From positions 558,001 to 622,000 of the forward strand of contig CM061247.1 of the NCBI GenBank assembly GCA_022605425.2: a DNA stretch of 64,000 nt. Reading direction: 5' to 3'. Shown here piece by piece: positions 3,801 to 27,640 of this stretch; positions within the stretch are counted from its first letter, which is position 1, and each line of letters opens with the position of its first letter. Source of the stretch: Hamiltosporidium tvaerminnensis FI-OER-3-3. Taxonomy: Eukaryota > Fungi > Microsporidia. The position numbers were made by a program, and so were the translations under genes. The notes beneath the pieces are model-generated. The model was given only the letters and a program-made list of their open reading frames with translations. It was not told the origin of the DNA and did not search any database.

Positions 3801-4850
3801 TATAAGAGTTGTTAGATATTTAAAGCTAATATTTTTTCGAAGTTAAAGGAGTAAACCAAGTTTATATTTACATGCAAATGAAATTGATGTAATTTCATTA
3901 AGATTTATGACTCAATCTTCTATAATCTTAAATAAAACCAGATTAAAAGAAAAAATGTAAAAATAAAGGACTGTCTTAAAAATCATTGACCTGGTTTAGA
4001 AAACAGAATATGACTTATGGAACATGAAATGTAAGATATTCGACAGGAGAATAGAAATATATGTGAATGATAAAATGAGCTGACACCAAAAAGGGCTTTC
4101 TATGAATGTAGAATAAAACACGGAAGTGCTATGACATAAACTCTCGCCGGAATACGTTGACGCTTCATCTGTTCATCCATAATCTCGTGGAGTAAAAAAC
4201 CGTTTAACCTCTTAATAATTCATTAAATGTCAAAAAATGTATGTATCAAATATTTGCAAAAATTTTAATACTGTTTAAAGTTCTATTTGATATTTCGAAA
4301 CAGCGAAATAAAGATCTTTCTATTTTACGATATTTACTGTTTAAAAGATATTTAAATTGATTAGGTTTTTCTAATAAAGTCAAATTTCTATTACTAAGGC
4401 ATATCAAAAAAAATAATATATCAATATAATGGAATCTACAAAATCACATTTTTCCAATTATCTTAATTCAGTATATAAATCTTAAATATACATGATTTAA
4501 ATAAGATAGATCCTCTGTTTTTAGATGCTAATCATAGTTTAGATGAATTTAAACAATGAGAACATATTTGAACTTTTACTTTCACTTAAATCCAAATCAA
4601 CTTTATTTTTTTTTAATAATTGTGTTTGTTGCTTAATTTTAAACTCAAATCATTTTGGATTCGGAATATTGGTTAGGTTAAAATTTTTTGATTACTTTAC
4701 AAGTTGAATATTTAACCTACATTATTTTAATATGCCCAAAACCATTATAGAACATTATATTAGTCTATATTTTATAGAATAAACAAAACAAACTTGAAAC
4801 ATATATTGTTTGGTAAATAAAATTTCCAAATAAATGTAAATAAATATTTT

Positions 4851-5771
4851 ATGATTTCTTTTATACTAAAAAAAGCAAATGAAGCATTTGAATCTTTAAC
4901 TGGAATGAAATTTACAAAATGCTCAAGAAGTCCATTCGATATAAACACCAATGATGAAAATCAAACAAACCAATCAGAGGAAATTATTCCGAAAAAATTA
5001 GAATATATGGTTCCTTTTAATGTTAAAAAATCATATTCTTTTTTTATAAAATATGGTAATTTAACAAGAAGTGAAAGGATATATTTATCAGAATATTGTT
5101 TCATTAATTTGAATAATATTTCAAGGTGCATATCTGTTACTAAAATTATTTTCATTGTCAAAGGCTTCTTTACAAAGCGCAAAAATTTTATATCGTTGAA
5201 AAGAAAGATCAATCCATTTGTTTTTGAATTAATTGATTATTTAAAAAAAGATGGTACAGACAAAATTGGTATTTTTAGAATTCCTGGCAAGAGTAATATT
5301 TATAATCAAATCTCAAAAGATTTAGGAGAAGGTAAAACATATCATATAGAATCATATGATATTAATACAAATGCTTCTATACTAAAGGCTTATATAAGAG
5401 AGATTCTCGATGGTTTAATACCTATTGAAGTTTGTAAAGCCTTATTTGAAATTGCCAATCAGAACGATCAAGAAAAAATTTCAAAGGTTAGAGAAGTGTT
5501 ACCATTTATTTTTTTAGAAGACTATAGATTTTTGATTATAAAAATTATTGATCTTTTAAAAACCATAGATTCACATTCCTGCATTAATAAAATGACGATG
5601 TCTAATCTTTTAATTATTTTTACACCAGCTTTTTTTCCAAAGAGTGTAACGAATAGCTATGAAATACTTGCATTGGAAGGAAAAATATTAGAACTACTTA
5701 CCTATTTGGATTTTGAAAATATTTCATTGGTCCTATTATTGGAAGCTAAAAAATATTTTGAACTTAAATAA
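4851..5771 (+). CDS. Rho GTPase-activating protein (RhoGAP domain)
   Basis: 306-aa ORF with GIFRIPG arginine finger, ASILKAYIRE and NKMTMSNLLIIFTPAF motifs. Confidence 0.9.
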   Translation: MISFILKKANEAFESLTGMKFTKCSRSPFDINTNDENQTNQSEEIIPKKLEYMVPFNVKKSYSFFIKYGNLTRSERIYLSEYCFINLNNISRCISVTKIIFIVKGFFTKRKNFISLKRKINPFVFELIDYLKKDGTDKIGIFRIPGKSNIYNQISKDLGEGKTYHIESYDINTNASILKAYIREILDGLIPIEVCKALFEIANQNDQEKISKVREVLPFIFLEDYRFLIIKIIDLLKTIDSHSCINKMTMSNLLIIFTPAFFPKSVTNSYEILALEGKILELLTYLDFENISLVLLLEAKKYFELK

Positions 5772-5789
5772 AATATATTCTCTAAATTC

Positions 5790-6515
5790 TTCATTTAAGA
5801 ATACTACATCTTTTTCAAAACTTTGGCAAATTTTATATTTGTTTTCATGACATTAATGCAGTTCTAAGTTTAACATAAATAACGGCTACCCAATACACCA
5901 TCAGTACCCTCTGCGATACCGACGTTCAAAAGCCTTTCATCTAACAGGTATGTAGAGCTTAATTAATAAGCGAGGTGGTTGCCCATAGTTCGTTAATGTC
6001 TGTTACATGAAGTATGGTTGTATTTCTTAACTAACCCTGGGTCTCTGAAGACTATGCAGCATTCCCACTTACTCTACACTTTCGGAACCTAATAAACTTA
6101 TATCTAAGATATATTTCAGAGGCTTACATGGGGTCCACATAGAAACTGCAATTTCATACCAACAGATACAACCTGATACTTAGTTTTCCTGGCTTTAAGT
6201 GTTTTTATTTTTATATCTCTTTTGCGCTAAGATTTCTAACCCGAGTGAGCAAGGCTAGATTTCCATGCTTTTACATGAAAATTACCTACATGTTCAGCTG
6301 TTGTCTACAATCTAATTACTTAAAAAACAACAAAAAATTTTGTAGAAAAAGTTTCGCTATTTCGTAGACCTTCTCCTCTTCATACAAACTCCGATGGAAC
6401 AACCAAAGATGTAGTGTGGTTTTATTACCATCAAAAATCCAAACAATGATCCTCACACCAGTTTCACATACTCATTGCCAAGCAGATGGCTTTTTATGTG
6501 GTTTTCCACCTTCCA
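5790..6515 (-). repeat. Dispersed non-coding repeat family, copy A
   Basis: Collinear similarity to copies at 37.6, 54.5 and 61.7 kb (e.g. CATTGCCAAGCAGA, CCGAGTGAGCAAGGCTA, CTAAGATATATTTCAGA). Confidence 0.9.
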
Positions 6516-7973
6516 ACTTTTTTTAAAATATATAGTTAATTAAATTTAATTGGGTCAATAACCGCAAGATTTAATATTATCTTTATATTTATTTCGATAT
6601 ATAAATTTGTAATGTATCTGTTAGATGATTTTAAAATAAAGTTAGATTACATTAAGATGTTATCAATTCAGAAAAAAACTAAAATACTTTCAGTTTTCCA
6701 AAACCATTATTTTTAGATTCACATGGAAATTATTTCAGATAAATATACTTCATTTATATGCAATAATTTAATTTAATCTAAAGGTCACAAATCGATTTAA
6801 ACCTAAATATAAATTACAAATATAAAAATTCTACCATCGTCTTTTCATTCTTTAACAGTTAATTTAATTTTTATTTTCAGATTATATTGCTTATCCTAAT
6901 CTTTTTTTTCGTAATTTTATTAATTTTGGCTCATTTTATACACTAAATCCTAAGATTTTTAATTCGCATTTTATACATTAAAAAACTATAAATTTGTGTT
7001 TTTATTAATATTTCGTGTAAAACTTAATTATTAAACCAGAAATTATAACATTTATGGTTAACTTTTGACATTCGAATATTTCAAACACATAGTTTAAATT
7101 TTGCATGTATTAAAAAAATAGTTTACATTTGAAAAATTCAATTTATAGGCGCTATCGGGATTTTGAATAAATATTTTGAAATCATTACGTAATGTTTTCC
7201 ATAAGAATTTTATTGTGCAGATGAATTTTTTTTCTTATTCTAATAGATATAATGGTCGGATTTACGTTCTCTACACCTAGTTTCTTTCAAAGTAAATAAA
7301 ACATTATTTTGAAAAGACATTTTTATTAAAAATTTCGTATATTTATATTTATACGTGACCAATAATATAACGTATCATATCTCATCGATGTCAGATAATT
7401 CGATCTAGATACCTTCATGAAGTAATTGGGTTATATTGGACCTAATTATATACCTTCATGATGCTCATTTGCAACAATAATTATCTTAGTTTTCGAAAAT
7501 TAAACATTTGATATTATGTAACAAATTTATTTATGTTAAAGATTTTATTTCATACAATACTATATTTCTATATTAAGTATAGCATTGGGTAACCGAAAAC
7601 TTTTTTTAATTTTTTCTAACTTTTTAAAAAAGCAGATCGAAATCAACATGAGGTAATAAAACAAATCAAGTTATTCGACTAAAAGAATATAAAATTTTTA
7701 AAGTTGTTTATATGGCATAATAAAACATCCTTTTCACCTAAAAAATAGTTTATATTTAAGAAATTATACTTATAAAATATTATAACAAATCATTGAGAGG
7801 GTTGTACAATTAAATATATTATTGAACCATAATTTGCAAATTTATGCATGGTTTTATTCCTTTAATGCGCCGTTAGATTGAAAACATATAATTTTTCTAC
7901 TGTGAATATGATTGTCTGTCTTTGTACCTTATCTATTTTTATCAGATAAAAAAAATTGTTTGTATATTTCTGC

Positions 7974-8020
7974 AATATGTTTAGTTATTTCTCTAATATG
8001 TTTAGTTATTTCTCGAATAT
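7974..8020. repeat. Short tandem duplication, 21-bp unit x2
   Basis: AATATGTTTAGTTATTTCTC occurs twice head-to-tail. Confidence 0.8.
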
Positions 8021-10898
8021 TTATATTATAAAAAAATAACTCCTTAAAAATTCAGCCCTATAAACTTTATTCTTACTAAATATTTTTATACAATATTATA
8101 CGCATTTTTTCAATATTTTTATAGCATACCTTAATATAAGTAGAGCTATTCGTTATCATACTTTCTATTTTCGCTGTTTAGGTTTAATTTTTTGATCTAT
8201 TATTTCATTTTTGGATATATTTATGTATACACAACTATAGATTTATTTTTTATATTAAAACTCGATTTATACTCGAATCAACCTTTTAATTTTAGAGTAA
8301 ACCAACGACTTGAAAATCTCATACTGATGTTTGATGAATTTAAAAAAATGGATTTGAAAAATTTAGAAATATTTTTCAATAGATTAACTAGATTTTGAAT
8401 TGCCAGGATGGATATCTTTTGTAAGTGCAGCTATAGAACCTAGAACTCTAGTCTGGTTTATTGGTGTTATATTTCATACTTCTTGAGAAATATAAAGTTT
8501 CGAAGCTATTTTTTTATATTTCACAACATAATCATTTCTATTTGTAATTTTGCTTAAAAATTGCAAAAAATTTATACTATTTTATGGGTAACCTAGTCGT
8601 GATATTCATTTGAAACGACTTCTTTGTTTACAAAGAACATTTATACATTACGGTTTTCTAATTGTGTTTTATTTTCTCTTTTTTTTGCTAATCGAAAAAG
8701 AATTTCGCTGAATTTATAAAATTTTTTCTATTCCCAGGTAGAGATATAGAATATCCTTCATAAGATTTACAGTTAGTTTTCTATATGTAATAAATACTTC
8801 TAGGTTTTGATTGATTTGTTCAGTATAATCATACATTTTTTTTATTTTTTATCGATCTGTTAATTTTGTGAACTTTTTTTAAGCAGATGATTTCAACATA
8901 TTATATGATTTTTTGTATTGTAAAAGTCTAATTGACAAATTTCAACTCTATACTTAGATTCTAGTAAAACATAGCCATTGTAATTTAAACGACAATTTGG
9001 ATCTAAGACTTTGCGTTCTGAAGAAAGACACCAAAACCTTCACGTAAATAGATGCATTTTTTATAGGCTGTTTGCAATTTTTTACAAAAACATACACCTA
9101 ATTTTTATAAATTAGAAGGAATACTTCTTTTCATCAGAACTAGTATATTAATGCAATTTTAACTTCATTAATTTTTAAATTTATTCCATCTTGGGTTCAA
9201 TCATATATATTTTTAAGGATCATGATTTCTATATATTAATCAGAGTTTCTATATATTTTATTCAAAAAGATACATTTTCCTTTGAAATTTTAAAATGAAT
9301 ATGTTATTTGTTTTTCAGATCCTAGCCTTTTTCTTTTCTTCGGAAATATCAACGTTTACTAATTTCATCTTTCATGGTAAATCATAAGAATACTTTATTA
9401 AATTTGTAATTTTGATTTTTTACTCAATTTATTTTTGATAATCTGTTTAATATTTTAAAAAGCCTATTTCCTAATTCAGAAATAGTAGCACTGTGTTTCT
9501 GGACATTCTAATAATATTTTTACAGAAAAATTCCTTTCTTTATGCATTCATATATTAAGTATATATTTTAAAGGGTTATGTTGTTTATAAGCTTTTACTA
9601 AGTAAATCTTACCGAAAGTATATATTTTACTGGTTTATTACAGAAAACAAATATTTCGTAATGTAAATAAAAATCTTAAATGCTCAAAAATATAATCTAA
9701 TTCCTGTATATTTCTAATGCAATACTCATAATTAAATTTTATGATTGAAAATTAAATAAAGTATAGATTATATTCAACAATAAACAATTATAAAATAAAA
9801 TAGGCTTGAGTTAATTTTGACGAAAAAAATTATAATCATAAAATTACCTGCGTATTTCAATATGTTGTTATAAATTCTAAAAAAAATCAGATACAAATGC
9901 TTTTACTTTTTCAAAATCTCCTTTTTTTTAAAAAATTATTTGTTAGATTTATGCCGACTTTATTTCTTAAAATAAAAATTAATTTTAGTTTTTTAATATA
10001 TCTTTTATTATATTGCAATTTAACTTCTTGAATAAATAAAAATATGTTTGACACATTATTGCTTATTAAAAACTAATTGTTTTGTTGAAACTCAAGATAT
10101 GTTTTGTTTTTCTATAATTATTTATAATTTACTTATGAAATCATATTTGATTGGTAATTTGACTTTTTCTAACTATTTAAAAAGTTCTTTAGAAATTAGA
10201 ATACCTAGAATCAGTATGATACTAATTTTGAATAAAAAAAATTTGTTTTTAATGTTTTCAATTGTTAATTTAATAATATGATGAATATCATTGTTTCCCG
10301 ATAATCTTATTATATTTGATATGCAGGTTATTTCGAAAATCTTGTACATAGTTATAATTTATGTAAAGTTTCACCAAGACTCGCACAAAAAATATTGCTT
10401 TTTACAAAAAGATATTAGAAAAACTCGTCATTATTTTTTATCCTTTAAACCCTATTTAAGGTTTAGTTTATAGAGAAACTATCTAAATAAATTCTAATTA
10501 TTTTTAGTCGATAATCTAAATGTAAATATTTTTTTACGAAAAATTCAAACGAACAAATGCTCGCAGTGAGTCGAAGTATTTAAATTAAAATGAGCCTATA
10601 AAACATTATATGGTTTTAATTCTAATAAATTCACTGCGTTTTTGCAAATATTTTATCTAGAGTATTAAATTATAACGCCGATATGAATGGGAACATTCCT
10701 TTTAAAGTAAGATATAATATATGTCTCTAATAGAAAAATCAAATCGAAATTTAGACGATTTTGTTATGTAATAAAGGATAAATTCAATAAAAATGGATTA
10801 TTTATGAAATATACATGTTCTTTTGGTTTTATAGTTTTGAAAATAATTTATGTTGTAAGGCGAAATAAAAAAAAGTATTTTTAGAAATATTTATACAT

Positions 10899-11847
10899 TT
10901 ATTTTTGTTTCCTAAAATATTTTATTATTTTAGAAATCTTATTGTCTTTTTGTGAGCTTATTTCTATAATTTTATTTGGTTCCTTCAATGAAATTATTTT
11001 TTGGTCAATAAAAGCATTATATTCTTCTCTACTTATATTTAAAGATTTAAATTCGATTCTTTCAATAAATGATATCGCAGTATCTAAAAGCGCAAGATAA
11101 TAGGTTGTTTCGTTGTAATTGTTCATACATTCATCAAGACAATCACAAATTTCTTTTGGTTCCACAAAATTTAAAAAATTGTTGTTTAAATGTGTACAAT
11201 TATGTTGACATCGATTAAAATTCTTATGTTTATAATAATTCATGAATAATTTTTCTATATAAACATTATGTATATCCGATTTGATAATGGAATAGATCAA
11301 AATTGGTAAAATTTCTTCTGCTCCTTTTTCAATTCCAATTTCTTTGTAACAAAATTTTATATGTTTCATATAACAATTTATTTTTTCTGTTGGTGTTCTA
11401 TAAAAAGGCAATTTACTAAAATTTATTAAAGAATTATTCAAAATACACGTGTCAAGTTTAATCTCCAAATGCTCTGATTCAATCCAACTGTAAAGCATTA
11501 ATTGGTTGTTAATAAAAGTATTTCTATCGGCATTCTCTTGTTTATTTAATCTAATTAGAAATTAATTACTTTTTATATAATACTTCACCCATTTGACTAA
11601 ATACATATTTTTCCGTAATAAACAAGCCATATTCACACAAAATTAATTTTTTCTTAAATAAATAATCATAAAATATCTGAAAAACAGCAGGAGTAATATT
11701 CTCTATTTCCTTTATATCATGAATAAAACTTAAATTAGAAATGACTTACGATTCTGTAAAATTAAAAAGTTGATTCTGATTATCTTTTAAAGACAATAGA
11801 AAGAAATGTATGCAGCCTTTTCTACATTCTGTCGATTCATTATTCAT
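10899..11847 (-). CDS. VPS9: VPS9-domain Rab5 GEF, three exons (11847-11750, 11728-11570, 11550-10899; 302 aa)
   Basis: VPS9 motifs (TPTEKINC, GAEEILPILIYSIIKS, YYLALLDTAISFI). ATG at 11847 follows CCCACCCTTA; removing two micro-introns gives a 909-nt stop-free frame. Confidence 0.82.
11551..11569 (-). other. 19-nt spliceosomal-type intron (VPS9 intron 2)
   Basis: GTAATTAATTTCTAATTAG; GT..AG with CTAAT branch motif; removal corrects a frameshift and joins ...LYK|KLNKQENADRNTFINNQLMLYSW. Confidence 0.75.
11729..11749 (-). other. 21-nt spliceosomal-type intron (VPS9 intron 1)
   Basis: GTAAGTCATTTCTAATTTAAG; canonical GTAAGT donor, CTAAT branch motif, AAG acceptor; contains an in-frame TAA that splicing removes. 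Confidence 0.8.
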
Positions 11848-14039
11848 TAAGGGTGGGCTATAGCATTTAACATAAAATAAATTTAAGGTTAGAAATGAAT
11901 TTGATGAATATATTTTTTTTCCAAATAAAACATATTTCCAAATAGAATATCATTAATAATGTGTTTATACAGGCTTGTTTATATTGTTTCTTTTACGCTG
12001 GATTAGTTTTTTTTGCAGTTTCTGAATTATATTACCAGTTTTCGGTTTTATTTGGCTGTTCTTACAATTTGATTTTTTTTTATTTTGAATCGATAAATTA
12101 TTTGCGAACTTTATATACGCAATTAGTGAAATTTCGGCTTTTTAATTTATTTTGTGGCAGTTTTTGCCTAATAGGTGTGTATATGTAACTAATATATTAG
12201 AGCTTTCGTATATCATTTATCTCTGTATAATATGAATGTTTTTTGATATTTTTGTGTTCTTATTAGCATTTGAGTCGAGACGAGAATTCTCTTGCTCAAA
12301 CAAAAGAAATGTTTTGGACTGTTTTTCCAATTAAATATACACTAAAAGTATTTTTTTCAACCTGATATGTAAAACACTGCAAGGTCAATCATAGGTCATT
12401 ACTAAAACAATAATATTCCATGCTATGAAATATAAAATTATCTAAGACTATTCCAAACACCAAACCGATTATATTCGATATCAAGCCTGCTTCGTCATAT
12501 TTTATGTTTATACAAATTGAATTGAATGAATTTAAATGTTTTGACTATTATAGGTATTATCTTATCAATTTTTTTTCTAAAATAAGTATTCCTATTTATT
12601 ATTCTCAATATATACATCAATTTTTATTTTAATACCTCATTTATTTCCAAATATCATTTTTGAAAACTTTCATAAAAACACATACTTTTGGTTTGTTCTA
12701 AGAGCTAAATTTATACTTATTTGAGAGATACAGATGTAAACACAGAATATCTCAGTGTGCCGTCTGTCTTAATAATTTTTAGTTTTTTTCATATTTGGTT
12801 GCAATTCCATACTGTATTACCCGAAAGACATCGGTTTTGGCATTTTTTATACTTTCATTAATATGTTCCTATCAAGAAATGCACATTAATTCCTGTCGAA
12901 TAATTCGATAACCGCTTTATAAAACTAAATTATTAAGTCGAGTCACTAAATAGTTTTTTTTCAGGCTTTATATAACTTCGGATTTAATTCCCGTTTTATT
13001 ATTTGGTTATAAAGGTTTTCAGAAAACCCTTTTTGGTAGTTATTTAGTGACTTATTAAGGTGTCTTATACTTAAATTTACTGAAGTCTTTTATCAACATA
13101 AAGTTTCTTCTATTATCGCATTCTTCTATGTGAATATTTACTAATTTTCTTATATAATTTTTTTTTGTGAAAACTCAAGCGTTGTAGATGCGAATGTTTT
13201 CTTTCGTACCAAATACAGTAACGCTTCTCATAACTTAAGAAATTCATATCTATAATTTTTCCTTAGAACCTGACGTAGATCATACAATTATTTTAAACTA
13301 AATACATATCATTCTATAACTTTATAAATCAGCTAGTCTGAACCTTATTCCTTTTATTTGATAGTCGATTAACTATATCTCATGTTAATTTATAGCATGG
13401 AATGATTTAATTGTTTAAATTTAGTACTAATGCGACTTCTAATTAATTTTATACGTTTCGTGTCTGGTTCTTCTGTCAGACTACATGTACGGTTTATTGG
13501 CTTTTTCTATTTTGTTTAGGTATTAATTACCATTTTAAGTCTCTAAAAAAGTTGCTATTTCTTCACAATATAAATCCACTTAATTGATATCACTTTATTA
13601 AACCAACGAAATTTTCAATGAAGGAAATTGCTTTGGTGAATTATTAAAATATTTGCAAAATCTCCATTTAAGTTTGCATTATATTAAATTTCAATAAATA
13701 TCTTTTTATGAGAACCTGCTTCCCATATATTTCTTGCTATTATATTTTTCTTAAACTAAAAATAAAAAAATTAAATAAAAACGAACAAAATAACATTTTA
13801 TTCTTAGATATGGTTCAATCTATTTGCCAATATTTCTTTCGAGCTATACCTATAATATTTTTAGGTTTAAGTCTTTGATTTCAAATTTTTTAGAATCTAT
13901 TTAAAAAATCCAGTTTCTATGTGGTATAACAGCTAACAGTCATAAATTTATAAATATGTCTAATACAAGAATATACTTGCATTATCTTAATAAAATATTT
14001 TTTTTATATATATAAATCAGTGTCACCATTTATTTTGAT

Positions 14040-14560
14040 GTTCAAATACCCTTTTCCACCTATATTATTCCACACAAACCTCCCAAATTAGATAAAACGC
14101 ATTTTCATAAGCTTTGTGATCATAATATATGTATTAGCAATACATATTATCGGCTTTAACCCGAGCCTCTTTGGAAAATACCTAGAAAATCACATATTAA
14201 ATTTTGCAAATACATAATTGCGGTAATAATGGCATTTAGATATTCGAGTAACATAATACTGTAAGGATACTAGTGAATAGCAAAATTTTACAGGATTCCT
14301 ATATCAAAATTGAATCTAATCTAAAAGCATTCGCATTAGAAAGCTATTTAATATATTAAAGACCCTTCAATGGAACAGAATATAATCAAGTAAGTCTAAA
14401 ATAAAAAATATATAAGAGTATTTGTAGGTCTACAGTTCTTATTTTATTTCGAATTCGAATTGTAAAACTTCCAATTCTCACAAAACGTAACATTTTATCA
14501 GATCAACCATTTAAATAAATCAAGATTATAAGCCGAATGCTCAAGTCGCTTGTATTTTAC
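14040..14560 (-). mobile_element. Decayed non-LTR RT fragment
   Basis: Minus-strand patches resembling LGIF and 'FYL...GGKG' (cf. RLYLPR..GGRGL); heavily broken. Confidence 0.25.
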
Positions 14561-15942
14561 ATCGCTTTCTATTTTCATGTATTATAAGATTTTTTTCTAA
14601 TTTACAGGAATATTTCTTAAACAGACATTTGATTTGTTCGTTCTTAATATTAGGTATTAAAATGAGTGCAGGAATAATTTTAATTAAGACTTTTTCTTAG
14701 AAAAAAACAAATTTTTTAGTCGAAACCATTTCTTAAAATGATCTATGAAAAAAACCTAAAATATAAATTTACCTTTTTATGTTTCCCCATCAGGCTGATC
14801 TCAGCTTTTATTTTATTTTTTCTCGTAAAAACACATATAGGGTACCTTAGTAATACTTGTACCAAATTTTATCGTTGTTTCTAAAGTTTAATTAAAAAAA
14901 TTTGAAGATTTGTTTAAAAGGTTCTGTCATCTTTGTCAAAAATTATCTCAAAAACATCCGAGTTTAAAGAAAGATTACCCAGCCTCGAATTTCCGATTTT
15001 TTGACCAAAATAATTATTGATCCAGATCATATACCAAAAAATATGAATCAAGAAACGTGACATGGGTAGAACAATTAAGTATTTAAAGCCATTTTTACGA
15101 CTATTTTTTTTATAATCGATTAGAGTTTCGAATTTCAATCATACCTACGTTAAAAATACATATAGAATATTATTATGATCGCGAAAATGTTCTGTTATTT
15201 TTTTTAAGTTTATCCTGATGTTTTATGTACCACAAAACATAGAGAAATTAATTCTGATCGGCTTTTTACAATCAAATAAACTTCAAGGTGCCATTATCTT
15301 CTTCTTTCATGAAATAATTAGGCTTTGGGATTCGTATATTCCATGGCAATATATGCAAAAGACATTTTCAGAGATAAATAACTTTTCACTGGTTGGGTTG
15401 AGTATTTAAGCTTTAAATTGTAGTTTTTTTCCATTTAATATATAAATGAATCATGATTATATTATAATTTAATAAAATTGTTAACTACTAGCAAGGATTA
15501 CATATCTCGTTTAATTTTTGTAACTTTTTATCTCGACCTATAATTTATTTCGGCTTTTCTGTAGCATAAACTCTTGCTTAAGCTATCTATTCTATATATC
15601 GTATCTCCAGTCATTTTTCTATATGGTGATTAATATTGACATAAATCATGTCAATCCTATATTAATAAAACCGAATTTCTTTATCATTGGCTAAGAAAAT
15701 AAAGAATTTGGTTTTCTTTTGAAAATCCAGATTAAAATTCTATTTCATAAATTTTACTACTCATGGTTTGTAAAAATAATTGAGTTTAAAATATCACACT
15801 TAGATACACTAATCGAAAAAAAAATAATTTAAAATAGTAAACATAATATCCAAATATATTATTACAAACCGAGAATTTTTGCATTTTTCCAATTCATATA
15901 TTTGAGATCTGATGCCCATCTAGATTTTAAAACCGTATTTTT

Positions 15943-16464
15943 ATGATAAAGAATGAAATGAAGATTAATAAAACAAAAACAAATACCATTTATGTAACAA
16001 ACGTTGATACTAATATTACATATCTTGTTTTACATGAACTCTTTACACAAACTGGAAAAATAAAAAATCTTAAATATCCGACTGATAAAATAACATTGAA
16101 ACACTTGGGATATTGTTATGTACAATATTTTACCGAAGAAGATTGTGACTATACAATAAAAATTTTAAATTTTATCAAATTAAATGGTCTGAGTATTAAA
16201 ATTCACAAAATAATGAATAAAAATTACACAAAGCTATTTGTTGGTAATATTAATTCCGAAGTTGACGAAAAAAATTTATTCGATATTTTTAGTAATTTTG
16301 GAACACCAATTGATGTCAGAATTATACGTGATGAGAATTTCAAATCAAAAGGTTATGGATTTATTACTGGAAATGAAGAGTTTTGTAAAAATTGTATTGA
16401 AAATTTAAATGGAAAAATTATTTTCGATAAAGTTATTACAGTATGTTTGGCAAAAGAAAATTGA
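15943..16464 (+). CDS. HSH49: U2 snRNP SF3b subunit 4 (Hsh49/SAP49), two RRMs
   Basis: TIYVTNVD..LHELFTQTG..YPTDKIT...GYCYVQY.TEEDCDY.IKILNFIKL, then LFVGNI and SKGYGFI; matches the SF3B4 pattern. Confidence 0.88.
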   Translation: MIKNEMKINKTKTNTIYVTNVDTNITYLVLHELFTQTGKIKNLKYPTDKITLKHLGYCYVQYFTEEDCDYTIKILNFIKLNGLSIKIHKIMNKNYTKLFVGNINSEVDEKNLFDIFSNFGTPIDVRIIRDENFKSKGYGFITGNEEFCKNCIENLNGKIIFDKVITVCLAKEN

Positions 16465-16650
16465 TATAAAGCTGAAAACAAATTGAATATACCAAAAGCA
16501 ATATTTATTATGTCGGTTATTATAAAGAAAATACTGCGAATAAAAACTCACCTCTTTTGCTGTAGAATTCAATATTTTAATATATTTGATTTTTAGAAAA
16601 TTAAATCTCTTTTGGTTTTATATATTAAAAAATTAAAAAAATTTATGATA

Positions 16651-17335
16651 TAAATATCACATCTTCATGTTAATGTGACAAATTTTATATTGTTTACATG
16701 ATATTAATATATTTATGGTTTTAGATATAACTACCTCAAAACTTCATCTGCATTTCTTAGATATTTAAATTCAAAGTCTTCGTCTATTAGGTGTTAAATT
16801 CTCATTGAATAAATTAAGAATTTACCCGAAATTCGTTAAAATCATTGTCATGAAAGTTATTGCTGGTTTGAACCCACTTTGACATCCAAGTCCTGCTAGT
16901 ATTCCTACTCGCACTATACATTTAAAAACGAATAGACTTCGAGTTAAGATATATCTCAGCGACTTACATAGATTTAACTAGAAGTTTTAAGTTTATACTA
17001 ACGGGTATAACCTGCTAATTAACATTATTCACGGCTCTTTGAAAAGTTTTTTGTATCTCTAAGGTGATAATACTTCTAACCCGAATGAACAAGGCTATGT
17101 TTTTTTTTATGGGGATTACTCAAAATTTCAATTTTGGTTTTCATTCAGTTCCTAAAATATAGAATAAGTTTTTAGAAGATTTTTCAATATTATTTAGGCC
17201 TTCCTTACTTAATAAAATTTCCATGTAAACAGCCGAGAATACATTGAGTGTTCATTTCATAAAAATAAAACCAATGATATTTAAATCTATTTTATTTAAT
17301 CATTTCCAACCAGATAATGTTAGTATGATTGGTCT
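16651..17335 (-). repeat. Dispersed repeat family, divergent copy B
   Basis: Shares TAAGATATATCTCAG, GGTATAACCTGCTA and CTTCTAACCCGAATGAACAAGGCTA with the other copies. Confidence 0.75.
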
Positions 17336-18646
17336 TTTTAAAATAGAAATTTGAGTCTCATTAAAATAAATTATTAATCTAAATTTTTTAAAATATTTTT
17401 TGATTCGTTACGACTTGTAATTTTGCTAAAACAAACAGTTTTGATCTTTTTTTGATTCATCTTATGAAATCTAGGCTCAAATTTTTAGGGATGTCTGAAG
17501 AGGCTAAATAATACAATAAGTGTATTACTATATGAGTTTTCTGTCTTTTTGAATTATTTTGGTAATTCAATTAAGAATCGTTACTTTATTCACATGCTTG
17601 GAATATAAGTTATCAATTCACCTCATAATTATGAAAAATATATTCGTTAAAAATCTAGATTGTTTGAAGAGAGAATTAAAAGCACAAAACTGAGCAGTAA
17701 AACGGAACAAACAAAAATAATGCGCAATATTTTCTGTAAAAATCTTTTAGCTAAATATATAAAAGAATCTGAATGACATTTATAAATATATCAAGTAGCT
17801 TTAGATAAGCTATATCCAAATTTATAAAATTTCAGACCTATGCTAAAAAGTAATTTCCAAAGTTGTTTTGCAGCGGCCTTGTAAAAGTATTCTCAATATG
17901 ATCCACATTCGGGTGTCTTTTTCCAAGTATTTTTTTAAATATATTATAAGAAAATCATCTATGAAATCAAAACCTATAAACTTTCCGGTTTAAATGATTC
18001 AAGCAAATGGGTATGTCCATCCTGTTATCCTGAAAACCTTTTCTTTGGCTTCTTCATTAGGAAAAATGAGAACATTCTGTGCGTTGCGGTGCTATCGAAA
18101 TAAATTCTTTAAAATTGAGCAAGTATTATTAAATGATCAAATAAAAACAAGAGAATATATGAAGCGAAACATAATATAATATTTTTGTTAACAAATAAAC
18201 TTTTTATATACACCTTTGAAACCGAATTCTTAATAAGTAATCACTTAAAATAATATAAAAATCAAATTCAATCATATTTTATTCTGATAAAGTTGTATAG
18301 TCGGTTGGATAAGTTTTAATCATAAAAAGATGTAGATAGAAATCCAATTTTTTGACTAAATTAAAGACAATAATTGTTTGGAAATATTTTTATTTAACGA
18401 AATTCATATACTTGTTATTGTTTTGAGTAAGGATCCACATTTGATGAAAATTGAAAGACTAAATTTTGAAATTTTAAAAGCAGATTTAGAATATTTTAAT
18501 AACAAAGATAAAGCCATTTCATTTTCAAAAAATAAAAAAAGTCGTCTATTTTTTAAACTAAATAAAAATAAAAATAAAAGATAATTAATTTATATTTAAT
18601 TATTTTTTGAGAAAGTAGTATATATTTTACTTTTTATATATAACAA

Positions 18647-20818
18647 TCATAAAAAATCATTTAGTTTTTTATGTTCTTCAAAACCGTAAGGTACTTCCGA
18701 ATATCCAATTATTATTTTTTCGATATGGCAAAATGCAGTATTCTTAATATACGCTTCCAATCCAAAAGCATTAAAAGCAGAAATTTCCCCTCTGATTATG
18801 TTATATTCCGTATATGGAACATCAAAAGTATCATTTATCTTACCTTTTTGGGAAGTAATAAAACTTTTAATAAAGTTTAAGTGGTGTTTTTGAATCAAAA
18901 TTTCGATATAAAAAATCGGTTCTAAAATTTTAAAGTCGCTTCTAAAAAGCTTTTTACATTCTTTTTGAAAATATATACCAGTCTTTGAATTATTTTTTGA
19001 GAAATTTACAGATATGTTAACGCCAAAAACTTCTTGAAAAACAATTGGACCCTGATTTATGAAGTTTTTAAATAATTTCGATAAATTTTTTGATGCCTGT
19101 GTAATTACCTTATCAGTATTTTTTATTTCATAGTATAAATTGTTTCCTTTGTATGTCTGTAATCTAATTTTATCTTTTTTATTTTCTTCGTTAATATTCG
19201 AGGTTAAATCACAAGATTTTAAATTTATTTTATCCTGACACTTATTAGATTCAATATTATTATCGCTTTCATTTAAAGAATTCAAAAAATGGTTATAAAT
19301 TGTTTCCTTAGTCATTATTAATTTATTATTTTCAAAATCAAAACAGATATTTTTATTATCACTTATCGGTTCAATATAAATACTAAACTTAGCTGTGATA
19401 CAAATTTTTTTTGATTTGATTGTTTCTTTAAATTTATTAAAAATATAAATTATTTTACAGTTAATTCCCATCTTGTTTATATCACAAAAAACGGAATCAA
19501 GAAATAGTTCTGATGGACCTGATATTATATTTTCTCTTATATTTATAGAAGGATAAAGCTTTTTCAATATTTTCATTGCTGAAGCATTTTCAACAATCAC
19601 TGAAATAATATTTTCTTCGTTCGATCCATTGGATTCTTCTTTAATTTCCTTATCTAAATAAACGAGATAAGGCAGGTCTTTCGTAAAAAAATCAACTTCT
19701 ACAACACCATTTTTAAGAATTAAAAATTTTTTAATCACCTTATATTCGTTGTTATTTATAAATATTTTATTCTCTAAACTTCCTGATTTTGATTGTGTAA
19801 TAGAAAATTTTTGATCTAATGTTTTATTTGATTTTTGATTGTTATTTTTAATGTCAAGATCTATGCTATTATCGGTATTTATTTGGGTATAACTATTTAA
19901 ATTTGGAAAATAAAGCGGTAAAATCATATTTTCTACTCTATAATGTTTCTTGATATACATTTCTTTACATTCAATATTGTTTTTTTTTATTTTAAATAAT
20001 TCATCAATGATTTCAAAATTAGAAATTTTTAAACTTTTTATTATTTTAATGATTTTGCTGTTTTTTTGAATTCTTTGCTTATCAATAAAAGCCTCATAAA
20101 AAGATGCTAAAATATCTTCATTATATTTAAATATAATATTTCTGACTAACGAAGTTATAAATATATTTTCGGTTTTTATTTTCGAACGTAAATATTCTAT
20201 TTTTTCAAAAATTACCGATAACGGCATATTCAATTCTATTATTAATTTATCTAATTTATTGAGAACTAATATTGTATTTTTATTTGAAATATTTTTTAAA
20301 TAAAGTCTACAAATCAGAGAAATATCTTCAGAGATATCTAAAATTAATACGGTTGAATGAAAATAAGGAATTATTTCTTGTGTTTCTCTATAAAATTCAA
20401 TGTGACTAGAAGTATCTATAAAATTTACAATTACCGACATTTCTTTTGTGTTTTGTAGAAGAAAAGTAATTGGTTTATAATGTATAGTTGTATCTCTTTG
20501 ACTTTCATACTCAGAATGAATAGTTTTTCCACAAAAATTAAATGTTTTCAGATCAAATTTATCATTTTCATCGCAAATTATTTTTTCTACATCAAAATTG
20601 GTAAAATTACCGAAATATTTTATTAGTGAAGATTTTCCACTCTTTATACCCCCAATAACACCCACATTCAATACTCTTTCTCGAATATTAGCAATCTGTC
20701 TAAAAAAATCATAGTTTTTCACTGTACATTTATTAAATTTATATTCGTAACTCCTAATCTCACTAATATTTTCGTCTTTTGATTCAATTTTATTACCAAA
20801 CTCATCAAAAGATTCCAT
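18647..20818 (-). CDS. SNU114: U5 snRNP GTPase Snu114 (EF2-like), reduced and divergent
   Basis: N-terminal 'FDEFGN', P-loop GGIKSGKS, NKLD, GPSELFLDSVFCD, and C-terminal ILEPIFYIEI...AFGLE. Confidence 0.85.
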   Translation of the reverse strand: MESFDEFGNKIESKDENISEIRSYEYKFNKCTVKNYDFFRQIANIRERVLNVGVIGGIKSGKSSLIKYFGNFTNFDVEKIICDENDKFDLKTFNFCGKTIHSEYESQRDTTIHYKPITFLLQNTKEMSVIVNFIDTSSHIEFYRETQEIIPYFHSTVLILDISEDISLICRLYLKNISNKNTILVLNKLDKLIIELNMPLSVIFEKIEYLRSKIKTENIFITSLVRNIIFKYNEDILASFYEAFIDKQRIQKNSKIIKIIKSLKISNFEIIDELFKIKKNNIECKEMYIKKHYRVENMILPLYFPNLNSYTQINTDNSIDLDIKNNNQKSNKTLDQKFSITQSKSGSLENKIFINNNEYKVIKKFLILKNGVVEVDFFTKDLPYLVYLDKEIKEESNGSNEENIISVIVENASAMKILKKLYPSINIRENIISGPSELFLDSVFCDINKMGINCKIIYIFNKFKETIKSKKICITAKFSIYIEPISDNKNICFDFENNKLIMTKETIYNHFLNSLNESDNNIESNKCQDKINLKSCDLTSNINEENKKDKIRLQTYKGNNLYYEIKNTDKVITQASKNLSKLFKNFINQGPIVFQEVFGVNISVNFSKNNSKTGIYFQKECKKLFRSDFKILEPIFYIEILIQKHHLNFIKSFITSQKGKINDTFDVPYTEYNIIRGEISAFNAFGLEAYIKNTAFCHIEKIIIGYSEVPYGFEEHKKLNDFL

Positions 20819-21560
20819 AAAATATCAAGGGTGTACATATAAATATCTTTATTAAATTTGAATTCAAAATATTAAAAATTTTAGTGTCTCCTGGTTTCAA
20901 TTTATAATTTCAATGCTGTTTAATCATAATTTTATTCTAAAATGATATAATAATAGGCTCAAGAGTTTCTTATTGTAATTACAAATCAAAATAAATATAA
21001 ACTGAAGTAAACCATTGAAAATATATTCAAAGAAAACATATGTTTCATCTTAAAATATAATAAATTTCTAAGAAGTATTTTAATTTATCATTGATTTATT
21101 TAAATATAGAAATCCAAACTCTACAAAAATCCATAAAATAAAACTTAATTTTTTAAAATAATCGGACTTTTTACAATGAATTTTTATTAAATCCTTCATT
21201 CTCCATATGAAGTTCTATTTTTTTCTAAATAAATTCTATGCAAAGCTTTAGATATATTTTTTAATGTCATAACATTACATTCATAATCTATTTTATTGAA
21301 AACTTATTAAATTTTAATACGATTGAATCGTGAAAGATTAAATTATTTCTCAAAATTTATATTTCTGAAAAGCTTGTAGGTGTAAAAACATAAATAAATG
21401 TTTTGAAAAAGAATGAAAGAATAAGTTTTTTTTTATATTCCGAATCATAAAATTAATATTTTAGTAAATAAATGATTTATAAAATTTATAATTTAGATAT
21501 TTTATCTTAGTTTTATTGATTTTAATATTATTGGATTTCCACATATATTTATTCATTTAA

Positions 21561-22223
21561 TTATCCCATCGAGTTTAATTCGCGTTTTCTTCCCCGTTTT
21601 CTAACCTCTATTAATCTGTTCAAAACAATCTTATCGGTATATCCTTCGTAAAAATAATCAATAATAAACTCAGGATGAGTACAACGAATTGCCTTTTCGA
21701 AAAGATAGAGATCTACAGCCTTGTCTTCTTCTTTGGTTGAGAAATATGAAAGTCCAAAATCTATGATATACAGATCCTCCTTCTTTAATATAAAATTTGA
21801 TGTGGTTAAATCACCATGTATAATATTGAGTTTGTGCATTTTTTGTATAGTTTCACCCAATCTAAACATTGTATTTTTTATCTCCGTAATTTTTATAGAA
21901 AAAGAATCCGAATGTTCGCTCTTATTAAAATTATCTTTATATTTTTCAATTTGACACAAGAAATCTTTTAATATTGAACCTTCAATATATTCCATAAATA
22001 AAGTGGTTTTATGGTCAAAATTTTGTAGCGGTTTAACGATTTTTGGTACAAGTATTGAATTTTGGTATAATTTGTCTAGAATCTTTTTTTCTTGTCGTGT
22101 TCTTTTAAAACGGATTTCATTATCAAGTTCCACTGGGCGATACAGTTTTGGGATTCTTTCTTTGACTATAATATTTTCTATTAATAAAATTTTTGCTTCT
22201 GCCCCCTGAGCTAGGATTTTCAT
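21561..22223 (-). CDS. BUD32: KEOPS complex kinase Bud32/TP53RK
   Basis: QGAEA, KERIPKLYR, HGDLTTSN, IDFGLS, EDKAVDLY, EVRKRGRKR. Confidence 0.95.
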   Translation of the reverse strand: MKILAQGAEAKILLIENIIVKERIPKLYRPVELDNEIRFKRTRQEKKILDKLYQNSILVPKIVKPLQNFDHKTTLFMEYIEGSILKDFLCQIEKYKDNFNKSEHSDSFSIKITEIKNTMFRLGETIQKMHKLNIIHGDLTTSNFILKKEDLYIIDFGLSYFSTKEEDKAVDLYLFEKAIRCTHPEFIIDYFYEGYTDKIVLNRLIEVRKRGRKRELNSMG

Positions 22224-22531
22224 AGAACGGTTGTTAATTTTTTAAAAAATATTTAAATTGCTTGGCTAATATACTTTAATCATTAAAATATAATTTTATA
22301 AATAGAAGTTAACAATTGAAGATCAAAAGACAGAAAGAAAATGATAATCAAGATAAAATACAGAAAATAGTTTTATTATCTTCAATTAGTGCTCGGAATA
22401 AAATTACCAGATTTCTCGAAGAACCTTTGTAAATAAATTAGAAATCAATGGAAATTGCTATTTTGTATTTTTTTTTCTGAAAGTTTATTACTAGATTATA
22501 GACCAATAATCTTGTTTTTATAGGTTCATTC

Positions 22532-23225
22532 AGGGTGTATAAGTACATTAAAAACTAGCTGATTGGCAACGATGGTGAAATGTGTTTCAAATGCATTTTT
22601 TGAATTTTTGGAAGCTGAAAACCACACTATATTTTCTGCTCTTACATGGAAATATGTTAAAGAGAAGAAGTCTACAAGAAGGCGGAAATTTTCTTATGAA
22701 CTTGGTTTTTCATGTACTAGGTTAAGTAATCACGATATAATTTGTAGATAATTAATATGTAAAAGCATGGAAGCCTAGCCTTATTCATTCGGGTTAGAAG
22801 ACTTAGCGCTTGGGAGATACAAAAATACACATCCTTTAAAAATTAAGGAATACTATATGGCTTGTTATACATTTGATACTGCATTGTAACGCCTTGATGG
22901 GCTTCATTAAATTGCCGAAATATATTATAGTATAAAACCTATTCGGTTCTGAAAATGTAGAGTAAATGGGAACACACCTAGCCTTTGGGTGTCAAAGTTC
23001 GTTTCAACCTGCGATCACACTCTAGCCAACAGACATTATGAACTCTGCGCAGCCGAACGCTCATAAAATATGTTCTACACACCTTCGGGTGGAAATCGAG
23101 TAGATGTGAGTTTTGAGGATAAAGATAGAGTGTTGGAGATTAGTTATTTATATTTAACCGTAAACTGCATTAATGTCATGAAAACAATATAACACGCGCC
23201 ACTTTGCTAAAACTTGCGATATTTA
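22532..23225 (+). repeat. Dispersed repeat family, divergent copy C
   Basis: AAAGCATGGAAGCCTAGCCTT...GGGTTAGAAGACTTAGCGCTTGGGAGATA and AACTGCATTAATGTCATGAAAACAA. Confidence 0.8.
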
Positions 23226-23632
23226 GGTTAAAAAATCATTTCTTTGGTGTAAAAATACTTTGTAGAAATTTAATCTAAAATTTTTAGTATTTTTGAAGGA
23301 ATTTCAAACAACAATTTTATATTATTTGGGCCGAAAGGATGTTTTAAAATGCAGTATTAAAAACTTTTTGGGAGAAAATTTTCTTTAATTATGTCTCTTT
23401 TGGAAATAATTTATTTTAAATTCAATTTAGAGCAAAGCATATCTTAAAATCAAAGAAAGCAATTTAAACTCAAATTAATAACGAATTTATATGTAAAAAA
23501 ATTTAGACAGTTAATTTATATTGTAAAATTTTTAATCTATACCCAAAAAATATAAAAGAAATTGGAATAACAGATTTCTATTCTGTTAGGTTTTCATATC
23601 ATGTTCGTATTTGATATAATGATTCAACTGAC

Positions 23633-23884
23633 ATGGCCAATAATATTTATCCATTAAATTATAATGAATGTTGGAATACACATTGTTTGAGCACCATAGA
23701 TGATTATTTGTTGAGAAAAAATAAATATCGAACCGATAGACTTCCAAAATTTTCAAATTTGCCTACGTTTGTACAAAAATTTATTTCCGAATCTCACAAA
23801 AAACGTCTTTGTGAGAGAGTAAATAGAAGTTCCGAACTGGCAAGATCTATCAATAAAATATGTAAATCAAAAATTCATCAATGA
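23633..23884 (+). CDS. Small four-cysteine protein, probably the mature part of a secreted peptide (signal segment out of frame)
   Basis: 83-aa ORF with Cx4C...Cx16C; clear paralog at 31338-31626; hydrophobic 'ISILLGFHIMFVF' lies upstream in another frame. Confidence 0.5.
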   Translation: MANNIYPLNYNECWNTHCLSTIDDYLLRKNKYRTDRLPKFSNLPTFVQKFISESHKKRLCERVNRSSELARSINKICKSKIHQ

Positions 23885-24074
23885 ATTAGTGTAGTAATTC
23901 TTCTTATAATTTCATATATAATAAAAGCTTAACAATATATTTCTTTATTTAACATTTAAATATTTTATTTTCTTTAAATAATTAAAGAACTTACATAATT
24001 TTTCAATTCTTCTTTTTTTAATTTATTATAACTCAGAATTATAGATTGTCTTTTGGATCTGATGTAGCTAATAT

Positions 24075-24165
24075 TACACAGAAATGGCAACAATGATCTT
24101 TATACCATTTTAATGCTCACATTGCCAAGCAGATGGTTTTTAATGTAGTTATTTCTCATTCCACC
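24075..24165 (-). repeat. Dispersed repeat family, 5'-end fragment
   Basis: CATTGCCAAGCAGATGGTTTTT...TTCCACC matches the family end. Confidence 0.7.
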
Positions 24166-25963
24166 TATCATTAAAGAAACAAGTTTATTTTTACTCTTTC
24201 AGAAAATTTTTCAGATGGTTTGGAAGTAAAATATTTAAAGTATGACGAACCTGAATTTTATTATAGATTAGAAATGTAATCTTAGTTAAGTAGCATATAC
24301 TAACAATATAGATGCTATAACATCGGGTGAGAAACTAGCAATTTTTTGAAAAAGACACAGTTAACATGAAATTTTTAGACCTATTAATATAAAAGGTTCG
24401 AAAAAAAAATTTACTTTCCTTAATTGCATATAAATCTAAGCTTAGAGGTAAATTATAATTTTTTTTGAAAACAATATTAAGAATTTGTATTTGAAAATAT
24501 GAGATCACGCTAAAGTAGTGAGTATTTTAGATTTTAGAATAGCTCATCCAAGCTTATTTTAAAACGAAAAATGCACAATATAATTTTATCAGCTAAGAAA
24601 TTTCATATATATTCGCTCCGGTTTTTAACTCAAAAAATTAAGAAGTTACACATTCTAATACATGAAACTCATATTGCCTTCTGATTTAACCAAATAATTC
24701 AAAAATTAAATATTTTAGATTATATTGTTACTGAGTTCAAAATACTATACGGAATAAAGTGCAACTACTGGTTATATTAATATAGCAGTTATTTTAATTA
24801 TCATTAGTTAAAAAAATACTATATTCAGAACAGAAACTTAATAAAAGTGGATATAATCACGCTGAGATCATCTAAAAGATTAAATGGGCACGAATATCAA
24901 AAAAACTTTACCTAATACCTTCTAATCAGAGAAAAAAAATTTGAAATAACATATATATTTTTAAACCGAGTATTGCAGTATAAATTGCTATTACAAGAAT
25001 ATTGATTTGATATAAACCAGAGAAATAAAATATAAATGTAAGAAATTTAAAAAAGGAACCGAAGTGTATAGAAAACAATCTATATAGAACTAAAATCATT
25101 ACATCATTAAATATAATAGCTTTGATTCGTAATTATGAGTAGGAATAAGACAAATTTCAATGATAAATTATGTCTTTACAATGTTAAAATTTATTCAAAA
25201 TAATCGAATATTATTCATGATTAAAGTAATCATTTAATATTCCTGTTTATAACTATTATAATAAATTGTATTATGATTATATCCGCTATATTTATGTTTT
25301 CGGAAGGCTATTATTTTATGTTAAAAATGTAATTAGAATAATTATTTCGCTTAAGAAATCCGTCTTGTTGCAAATATTCAAGTTCAAATTTATTGTAGCT
25401 TAAACATAAGTTTATTTATATCTTTTATAGTAATAAAAACAAAATAATTTGCTTTTTATTCTCAAATAAAATTTGAAATAGTGGAACTTAAATAAAAAAG
25501 CTAAATTTTTATCTCTGATAGGTAAACTCTATAATTAGAAAACCTTAGAAGGATCAACGAAACATATCCTTTCTGTAAGAACTGTATCAAATGACTTGAA
25601 AATATATTATGAAATTGCTAAGGTTCAGTGGTTTCTAAAAACTTTTATGGAAAAGTAGCTAAAAATATCAAATTAAATTTTAACCTCCTATAATAATACA
25701 CACATGAAATACATTGATGCGTATTCAATCAAATAATATATTCCTTAGAAAAGATATAATATAAGACTTCATACCAGCTACTCATTTTTATTTTACGGGA
25801 TTTTGAATACTAAAAAATAAATTAGAAAGACAAATATTTTTTTTATTGAATCTGTTTGTAACTATGTATTTAAAGATTGAATAGCAACAATTCTATGAAA
25901 TTAGAATGTGGATTAAAAAAAATTACAAAGAATTACTTTAATAAATTTATTCTTCATTTTTAT

Positions 25964-26374
25964 TTATTGTGAGAAGTTCTCCAACATTTCATTTATTTTC
26001 TGTTCCATTTCTTTACATTTCGTCCTTTTCTCTTTCATTAACATATTAATAGATTCTTTTGCTTCAAAATATCTTGAATCTGAAATCATTTGATTAATAT
26101 TTAAATGCACATCTCTGATCATCTTAATATATTTAGAAGGATCTTTGTCTTTAATAATTTTGGAAAGAACTTTATTAAATAACAATAATGACCTTTCAAT
26201 CGAATTTTTTATTTCTTTGAATGGAATTTCTTTTATATTCTTATTTTCTGTAATTCTTGGTACACCATCTTGATTTATAATAAAATTAACACCGAAACAT
26301 GTATATTCTTTTGGTATAATAGGTGGAGATTCGTCTTTTCTAATTAGCGGTTTTGGCCAGGAGTTGATAATCAT
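25964..26374 (-). CDS. MED7: Mediator subunit Med7
   Basis: PPIIP..YTCFG and VHLNINQMISDSRYFEAKESI resemble the Med7 'N.HHL.N..RP.QARE.L' pattern; CCCC precedes the ATG. Confidence 0.8.
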   Translation of the reverse strand: MIINSWPKPLIRKDESPPIIPKEYTCFGVNFIINQDGVPRITENKNIKEIPFKEIKNSIERSLLLFNKVLSKIIKDKDPSKYIKMIRDVHLNINQMISDSRYFEAKESINMLMKEKRTKCKEMEQKINEMLENFSQ

Positions 26375-26472
26375 TGGGGTAAATATTGTGTAGCACAGTT
26401 TAAAATTTTTAATTTATTTTAATAAGGGAAAACGAAATTTAAAAAATTATAAGCTTTTTTCAAAAATATTTA

Positions 26473-27510: not shown

Positions 27511-27640
27511 TTTTTATAGAAATACTTAAATTCGTATCGCTTTTTCTCTATTTTAACATTTTAGGTCTCATCATAGGTACGACTCTTATTTTTTTTACTA
27601 AATAGTTTGATATTTGTGATTAATAATTTTTTCTATTGAT

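What the first reader, a model, noticed from the sequence alone, without database searches (positions are those of the whole stretch)
11551..11749. Hidden 19-nt and 21-nt spliceosomal introns in the VPS9 gene
Seen: from the CCC-preceded ATG at 11847 (minus strand) the frame hits TAA inside GTAAGTCATTTCTAATTTAAG (11749-11729, 21 nt), stays open for 159 nt, then shifts at GTAATTAATTTCTAATTAG (11569-11551, 19 nt). Removing both gives one 302-aa frame joining the ORF-track VPS9 domain. The two share GTAA.T.ATTTCTAATT, with the branch motif almost fused to the AG. Known: microsporidian introns are short with a GTAAGT donor and TAAT-AG end, but those I recall are generally above about 22 nt and mostly single, near the start codon; 18-21 nt is the chlorarachniophyte nucleomorph range. 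Inference: this lineage splices near-minimal, internal, multiple introns that gene finders miss, so many genes may be mis-annotated.
Basis: partly seen in the sequence, partly recalled or inferred. Interest (0 to 1): 0.85.

Follow-up and report, generated by a model that had tools for sequence, protein, structure and literature searches.

The report
Two tiny introns in microsporidian VPS9
A gene for an endosome-trafficking protein (Vps9) in a water-flea parasite is split by two real introns of only 21 and 19 bases; the first is already published, while the second is unannotated and, like the first, sits at the same place in distantly related microsporidia (down to 18 bases), so the database protein is missing its first third.

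Summary
Observation confirmed. The genome is Hamiltosporidium tvaerminnensis (scaffold_3). The 21-nt intron is already published: Angst et al. 2023, Table S2, same coordinates, 31% spliced in Iso-Seq. That table holds other 20-25 nt introns, three genes with two each, so short, internal, multiple microsporidian introns are known (also Vavraia). The 19-nt intron is not listed and databases keep a truncated 199-aa Vps9. It is very probably real. A relative at 79% identity keeps it at 19 nt and lacks the annotated start codon. Exons 1 and 2 each match the N-terminus of full-length microsporidian Vps9 proteins. Both introns sit at the same codon positions and phase in distant microsporidia (18-26 nt; one lineage has both at 18 nt), so they are probably old. 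U1, U2 and U6 genes are present. No RNA reads could be tested here. 'Many genes mis-annotated' is overstated: motif excess suggests tens of introns. The scan noted other 19-nt candidates in this genome before (PP2C and others). New here: a corrected gene model, deep conservation of two non-ribosomal introns, and a probable microsporidian size floor of 18-19 nt versus 20 nt RNA-confirmed.

The parts
11851..11857 (-). CCC-like signal (CCCACCC) just upstream of the true start codon
   Evidence: sequence; CCC/GGG start signals of microsporidia described in PMC10815200
11750..11847 (-). Exon 1 (98 nt, ATG at 11847), with the conserved N-terminal CxxxC motif
   Evidence: alone scores 15.5 bits on the orthologue N-terminal profile, 0 of 500 shuffles reach it
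11729..11749 (-). Intron 1, 21 nt, phase 2, GT-AG, in frame with a stop; inferred branch A at 11735
   Evidence: Angst 2023 Table S2 scaffold_3:569729-569749, 30.8% spliced; appears as a 7-residue insertion against the orthologue profile; same site in L046, L047, L050, L048, L051
11570..11728 (-). Exon 2 (159 nt), conserved region N-terminal to the VPS9 domain
   Evidence: 37 bits on profile of non-Hamiltosporidium orthologues; other frames below 0
11551..11569 (-). Intron 2, 19 nt, phase 2, GT-AG, frameshifting; inferred branch A at 11555
   Evidence: same site and length in relative L003; same site and phase in L050 (18 nt), L045 (25 nt), L053 (26 nt); no RNA evidence
10899..11550 (-). Exon 3 (to stop); the annotated 199-aa ORF starts inside it at 11498
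   Evidence: the 17 codons before 11498 show 6 synonymous vs 3 replacement codon differences and the ATG itself is ATT in L003
11052..11423 (-). VPS9 (Rab5 GEF) domain
   Evidence: Pfam PF02204 45.2 bits, cut-off 27
4291..27594 (.). About 23 kb inverted segmental duplicate (95-97% identical) of C2:501814-525636, holding a second intact VPS9 copy with identical introns

Best explanation
The gene is the microsporidian Vps9 (Rab5 guanine-nucleotide exchange factor), 302 aa in three exons. Both segments are ordinary major (U2-type) spliceosomal introns at the short end of the microsporidian range. U1 (5' ACUUACC) and U6 read the GUAA(G/U)U donor, U2 (GUAGUA) pairs with CUAAU, and the first AG 4-6 nt after the branch A is the acceptor. 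In both introns the inferred branch A is nucleotide 15, so intron 2 needs the same lariat loop as the RNA-confirmed intron 1 and is shorter only in the branch-to-AG tail (4 nt, the commonest value among confirmed introns). Splicing is probably inefficient (intron 1: 31%), and retention of either gives a stop before the VPS9 domain, so only doubly spliced mRNA gives full protein. The introns were probably inherited from an early microsporidian ancestor and lost separately in several lineages. Shown: intron 1 splicing (published), exon homology, positional conservation, snRNA genes. Inferred: intron 2 splicing, branch positions, snRNA pairing, ancestry and loss.
For: Published Iso-Seq for intron 1. 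Full-length orthologues of 257-330 aa (Astathelohania, Spraguea, Conglomerata, Binucleata, Nucleospora and others) carry about 75-110 residues ahead of the exon-3 match; exon 1 and exon 2 each match them, other frames do not. Relative L003 keeps intron 2 at 19 nt with a canonical donor, lacks the annotated ATG and has a stop in the read-through frame. Same-site, same-phase introns in distant lineages: intron 1 in L046 (19), L047 (20), L050 (18); intron 2 in L050 (18), L045 (25), L053 (26). U2, U6, U1 genes in the genome. Intact in H. magnivora, the duplicate copy and an independent run.
Against: No spliced read for intron 2 was seen: the three RNA runs laid held no parasite reads, and the intron is absent from the 17 listed by Angst et al. 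although intron 1 of the same gene had coverage. Its donor GTAATT departs from consensus at +5. The spliced linker is a few residues longer than in most orthologues (profile positions 77-82), though within their range. The distant contigs are of unnamed organisms, and the tree is a quick, poorly resolved one.
Confidence: 0.93

Rival explanations
1. Only intron 1 is spliced and lies in a 5' leader; the protein is the annotated 199-aa ORF from 11498, and exons 1-2 are a decaying relic or upstream ORF.
For: All five database proteins of the cluster are 199 aa or partial; only intron 1 is in the published table.
Against: The 11498 ATG is ATT in L003, whose next Met lies inside the VPS9 domain; exons 1-2 are open, conserved and orthologue-like; the 19-nt segment keeps all splice motifs across species.
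Confidence: 0.03
2. Segment 2 is bypassed without splicing (ribosomal frameshift or transcriptional slippage at the A-run before it), or through a different splice junction.
For: A run of five A precedes the donor; weak +5 position.
Against: The homologous segment varies 18-26 nt across lineages while keeping GTAAG..TAAT..AG, and the A-run is absent in L045, L053 and L050; the other nearby GT (33, 38, 47 nt) and AG choices do not restore the frame in both Hamiltosporidium species or delete conserved codons (sequence).
Confidence: 0.03
3. Assembly error or pseudogene: the stop and frameshift are artefacts or decay in a duplicated copy.
For: The gene lies in a segmental duplicate.
Against: Identical introns in both copies, in the H. 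magnivora assembly and in an independent run's contig spanning 10987-11759 without gaps; intron 1 is spliced in vivo.
Confidence: 0.01

Closest known systems
Iso-Seq-confirmed introns of H. tvaerminnensis (Angst et al. 2023, PMC10542269, Table S2)
   Same: Intron 1 is one of them; same GTAAGT / T-rich / CTAAT / short tail / AG build; 20-25 nt class; two-intron genes already listed
   Different: Intron 2 is not listed, is 1 nt shorter than the shortest there (20 nt) and has a GTAATT donor; the protein model was not corrected
Short introns of Encephalitozoon cuniculi (22-76 nt; PMC3629993, PMC6349667) and Vavraia culicis (22-28 nt mostly, mid-gene, multiple; PMC4435813 Supplementary Table 1)
   Same: GT-AG, strict donor and branch motif, branch close to AG, low splicing efficiency, internal positions; Vavraia has one predicted 19-nt intron without RNA coverage
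   Different: 19 nt here and 18 nt in one orthologue are below the RNA-supported sizes I found; VPS9 is not named among the intron genes in the papers read (the E. cuniculi gene list of Lee 2010 was not available)
Chlorarachniophyte nucleomorph (18-21 nt), Mikrocytos (16-17 nt), Stentor (15-16 nt) introns (PMC10245619)
   Same: Overlapping or near size range
   Different: Those genomes have hundreds or more introns of uniform size; here introns are few, 19-68 nt, with a clear branch motif; no size record for eukaryotes
Conserved long Poly-A/S23 microsporidian introns (Whelan 2019) and the cold-shock intron of Vavraia
   Same: Non-ribosomal or internal introns kept at one position across distant microsporidia
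   Different: These VPS9 introns are minimal in length, with no conserved internal element

Membership tests
U2-type spliceosomal intron (microsporidian short class) | GT...AG ends | tested here: met
U2-type spliceosomal intron (microsporidian short class) | GTAAGT-like donor matching U1 5' end | tested here: met
   intron 1 GTAAGT; intron 2 GTAATT (GTAAGT in L003); U1 gene with ACTTACC, E 1.3e-12 but under Rfam cut-off
U2-type spliceosomal intron (microsporidian short class) | Branch motif a few nt before AG, complementary to U2 GUAGUA | tested here: met
   CTAAT with 6 and 4 nt tails, as in published introns; U2 in two copies over cut-off
U2-type spliceosomal intron (microsporidian short class) | Removal restores a conserved reading frame | tested here: met
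   (exon by exon)
U2-type spliceosomal intron (microsporidian short class) | Removed from RNA: intron 1 | not testable with these tools
   no parasite RNA served; shown by the published table, 30.8% spliced
U2-type spliceosomal intron (microsporidian short class) | Removed from RNA: intron 2 | tested here: inconclusive
   three RNA runs held no reads of the organism; not in the published table
U2-type spliceosomal intron (microsporidian short class) | Lariat at the inferred branch A | not testable with these tools
   branch position is from motif only
Vps9-domain Rab5 GEF | Pfam VPS9 domain above cut-off | tested here: met
   45.2 bits vs 27
Vps9-domain Rab5 GEF | Colinear with full-length microsporidian Vps9 orthologues | tested here: met
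   profile positions 3-82 (exons 1-2 frame) and 82-286 (exon 3)
Vps9-domain Rab5 GEF | Nucleotide exchange on Rab5 | not testable with these tools
   inferred from family (PMC13393502)

The most novel reading that the evidence does not exclude
Microsporidia share a set of old, non-ribosomal-gene introns that have shrunk to 18-19 nt, below the RNA-confirmed floor for the group (20 nt), at a limit set by a 14-15 nt donor-to-branch loop, and in the Cucumispora clade the first VPS9 intron is still spliced from non-GT donors (GA and CT). These introns are missed across public microsporidian annotations, so intron retention in the group is underestimated and VPS9 is a ready natural series (18-26 nt, present/absent) for testing the minimal intron.
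Probability: 0.45. Interest if true: 0.62.

Novelty: new member of a known kind. Interest (0 to 1): 0.42.

Why it matters
It fixes a gene model (199 to 302 aa, both copies, also H. magnivora) and shows why such models break: a confirmed intron was listed while its 19-nt partner was missed. More broadly, two introns kept at the same codons in distant microsporidia, at 18-26 nt, lower the probable size floor for the group by 1-2 nt and give a natural length series for asking how short a donor-to-branch loop a reduced spliceosome accepts. It is not a eukaryotic record (15-17 nt in Stentor and Mikrocytos) and not a new mechanism.

Tried and rejected
RNA test: no indexed RNA run holds the locus; three RNA runs of another species label (probably the host) laid on 9500-14900 gave no usable reads, so no test. 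Word-seeded protein search found only Hamiltosporidium relatives; the full HMMER search was needed. Loose motif scans are not enriched over control, so motif counts alone were rejected as evidence. Exons 1 and 2 have no Pfam hit. Lee et al. 2010 and the supplements of Haag 2020 and the 2026 GTPase paper were not held, so a prior mention of VPS9 introns there cannot be excluded. A possibly closer outgroup hit proved an intronless 621-aa gene, so no fungal outgroup test of intron age was obtained. The careful tree did not finish. As the operators require, the joined spliced protein was not sent to any search, fold or alignment; it was translated once in a local script only to check the 302-aa claim, and all comparisons were exon by exon.

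Full report
Observation. Exon 1 is 98 nt from the ATG at 11847, exon 2 is 159 nt, and the joined frame is 302 aa to the stop ending at 10899. Both introns are phase 2. Intron 1 is in frame but holds a stop; intron 2 shifts the frame. Exon 3 carries a VPS9 domain. The motif by itself proves little in DNA of 25% GC, so the case rests on independent evidence.

Source. The assembly is 21,638,905 bases in 17 contigs, the window lying at 558,001-622,000 of a 1,839,609-base contig. This matches Hamiltosporidium tvaerminnensis, scaffold_3 (PMC10542269), and the encoded protein cluster is named from that genus.

Intron 1 is published. Table S2 of that paper lists scaffold_3:569729-569749, minus strand, 30.8% spliced in Iso-Seq reads; this is window 11729-11749 exactly. 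The table has 17 introns of 20 to 68 nt by their coordinates, 13 of them 20-28 nt, and three genes with two introns. Those I fetched share the build seen here: GTAAG donor, T-rich middle, (C/T)TAAT, then 4-6 nt to the end. Intron 2 is not in the table, and database proteins for this gene in H. tvaerminnensis and H. magnivora are 199 aa, starting inside exon 3.

Intron 2, near relatives. A contig from run SRR25742230 (L003) is 79% identical in exon 3. It has a 19-nt segment at the same site with the canonical donor GTAAGT and two internal changes. Its exon-2 frame is open and conserved; the frame that would read through the segment has a stop. The annotated start codon is ATT there, and the 17 codons between the intron and that codon differ by 6 synonymous and 3 replacement codons. 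So the region upstream of the annotated start is coding, and it can be reached only by removing the 19 nt.

Distant orthologues. A profile search with exon 3 found full-length microsporidian Vps9 proteins of about 260-330 aa, with 75-110 residues ahead of the exon-3 match. Against a profile of these non-Hamiltosporidium proteins, exon 2 scores 37 bits, exon 3 186 bits, and the unspliced exon 1-2 frame 47 bits with a 7-residue insertion exactly at intron 1; the other five frames score below zero. Exon 1 alone scores 15.5 bits on the N-terminal profile, above all 500 shuffles. The joined protein was not searched; all tests were exon by exon.

The introns are shared across microsporidia. Several hits were truncated at the N-terminus, and their DNA shows why. 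At the intron-1 site (phase 2, before the F of FIHD) L046 has a 19-nt intron (51% GC contig), L047 a 20-nt one, and L050 an 18-nt one. At the intron-2 site (phase 2, before L) L050 has a second, identical 18-nt intron, and L045 and L053 have 25 and 26 nt while lacking intron 1. These contigs fall in separate parts of a quick tree: L046 and L047 in one clade, L045 next to the Enteropsectra-Nucleospora-Pancytospora clade, L050 unresolved. Named full-length orthologues were called as single ORFs and so appear to lack both. The simplest reading is inheritance with repeated loss; independent gain at the same codon and phase in several lineages is unlikely but was not formally tested. In Cucumispora dikerogammari (L048) and its sister L051 the frame at site 1 is restored only by 20- and 22-nt segments beginning GA and CT instead of GT; this may be non-canonical splicing, decay or error.

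Mechanism. The genome encodes U2 (two copies, GUAGUA intact), U6 and a U1-like gene with ACUUACC. U6 has ACUGAGA in place of ACAGAGA, which would pair with donor +4 to +6 AGU (inference); the same change is reported in Cyanidioschyzon merolae. The inferred branch A is nucleotide 15 in both introns, so intron 2 asks for no tighter lariat than the confirmed intron 1; its 4-nt tail is the commonest among confirmed introns. The 18-nt orthologues would need 14. If intron 2 is spliced as poorly as intron 1, only a minority of transcripts give full protein; whether that is regulatory or simply tolerated is unknown.

How many more. Among hand-picked motif hits elsewhere in the genome, removal joined long frames for 11 of 22 unpublished hits of 20-25 nt, 2 of 7 of 19 nt and 0 of 10 of 18 nt or less, against 3.5% for random deletions and 6 of 9 for published introns (selection was not blind). 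One 19-nt case completes the N-terminal motif of a PP2C phosphatase. So 19 nt looks like the floor in this genome. Strict motif counts exceed control by only tens (75 vs 53; 27 vs 12), so hidden introns number tens among about 3,570 genes; I could not check which are among the 98 already predicted.

Comparison with the literature. Shorter introns are known in nucleomorphs (18-21), Mikrocytos (16-17) and Stentor (15-16). I found no paper on VPS9 introns in microsporidia, but some supplements were unavailable.

RNA. No served RNA run held the parasite. One independent contig set spans both introns without gaps, which, with H. magnivora and the duplicate copy, excludes an assembly error.

Verdict. 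Real. One intron is already known, the other is a new member of a known class with strong comparative but no direct RNA support. The added value is the corrected model, the conservation of both positions across microsporidian clades, and a probable 18-19 nt floor. Interest 0.42.

Noticed in passing
window 4291-27594 and G000:C2:501814-525636: About 23 kb inverted duplicate at 95-97% identity, 36 kb away. The other VPS9 copy differs from H. magnivora at 1 site, the window copy at 10; run X3 shows only other-copy letters at four sites. Similar inverted pairs recur (U2 genes on C10, C6:544104/629004, C2:1692978/1739405). Real duplications or mis-joined haplotypes?
   Followed up: partly
L050:602-619 and 764-781 (SRR27489468, 17.7% GC): Both VPS9 introns are 18 nt and identical in sequence, each in frame with a stop; organism unnamed.
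   Followed up: partly
L048:1246-1265 (Cucumispora dikerogammari) and L051:474-495: Intron-1 site needs segments starting GAAAGT and CTAAGT: possible non-GT donors in two sister lineages.
   Followed up: partly
L056:1501-1620 (G000:C12:1091599-1091718): U6 snRNA has ACUGAGA instead of ACAGAGA, as reported for C. merolae.
   Followed up: partly
L006:1512-1530 (G000:C12:2089311-2089329) and L005 (G000:C2:1680240-1680258): Two more 19-nt candidates that join long frames (PP2C; a membrane protein); both, like VPS9 intron 2, have a GTAATT donor.
   Followed up: partly
L030, L002:3280-3299, L033, L036, L038, L039: Unpublished 20-23 nt motif hits that join frames, including a NEDD8/ubiquitin-like gene and a DUF167 gene.
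   Followed up: partly
window 18647-20818 (-), 26473-27510 (-), 4851-5771 (+): EF-G/Snu114-like GTPase, prenyltransferase and RhoGAP genes by Pfam; the GTPase and RhoGAP lie inside the duplicated segment.
   Followed up: no
exon 3 and orthologues: Microsporidian Vps9 has Cys-rich motifs (N-terminal CxxxC, C-x-x-G in exon 2, and a Cys/His insert in the VPS9 domain) that may bind metal.
   Followed up: no
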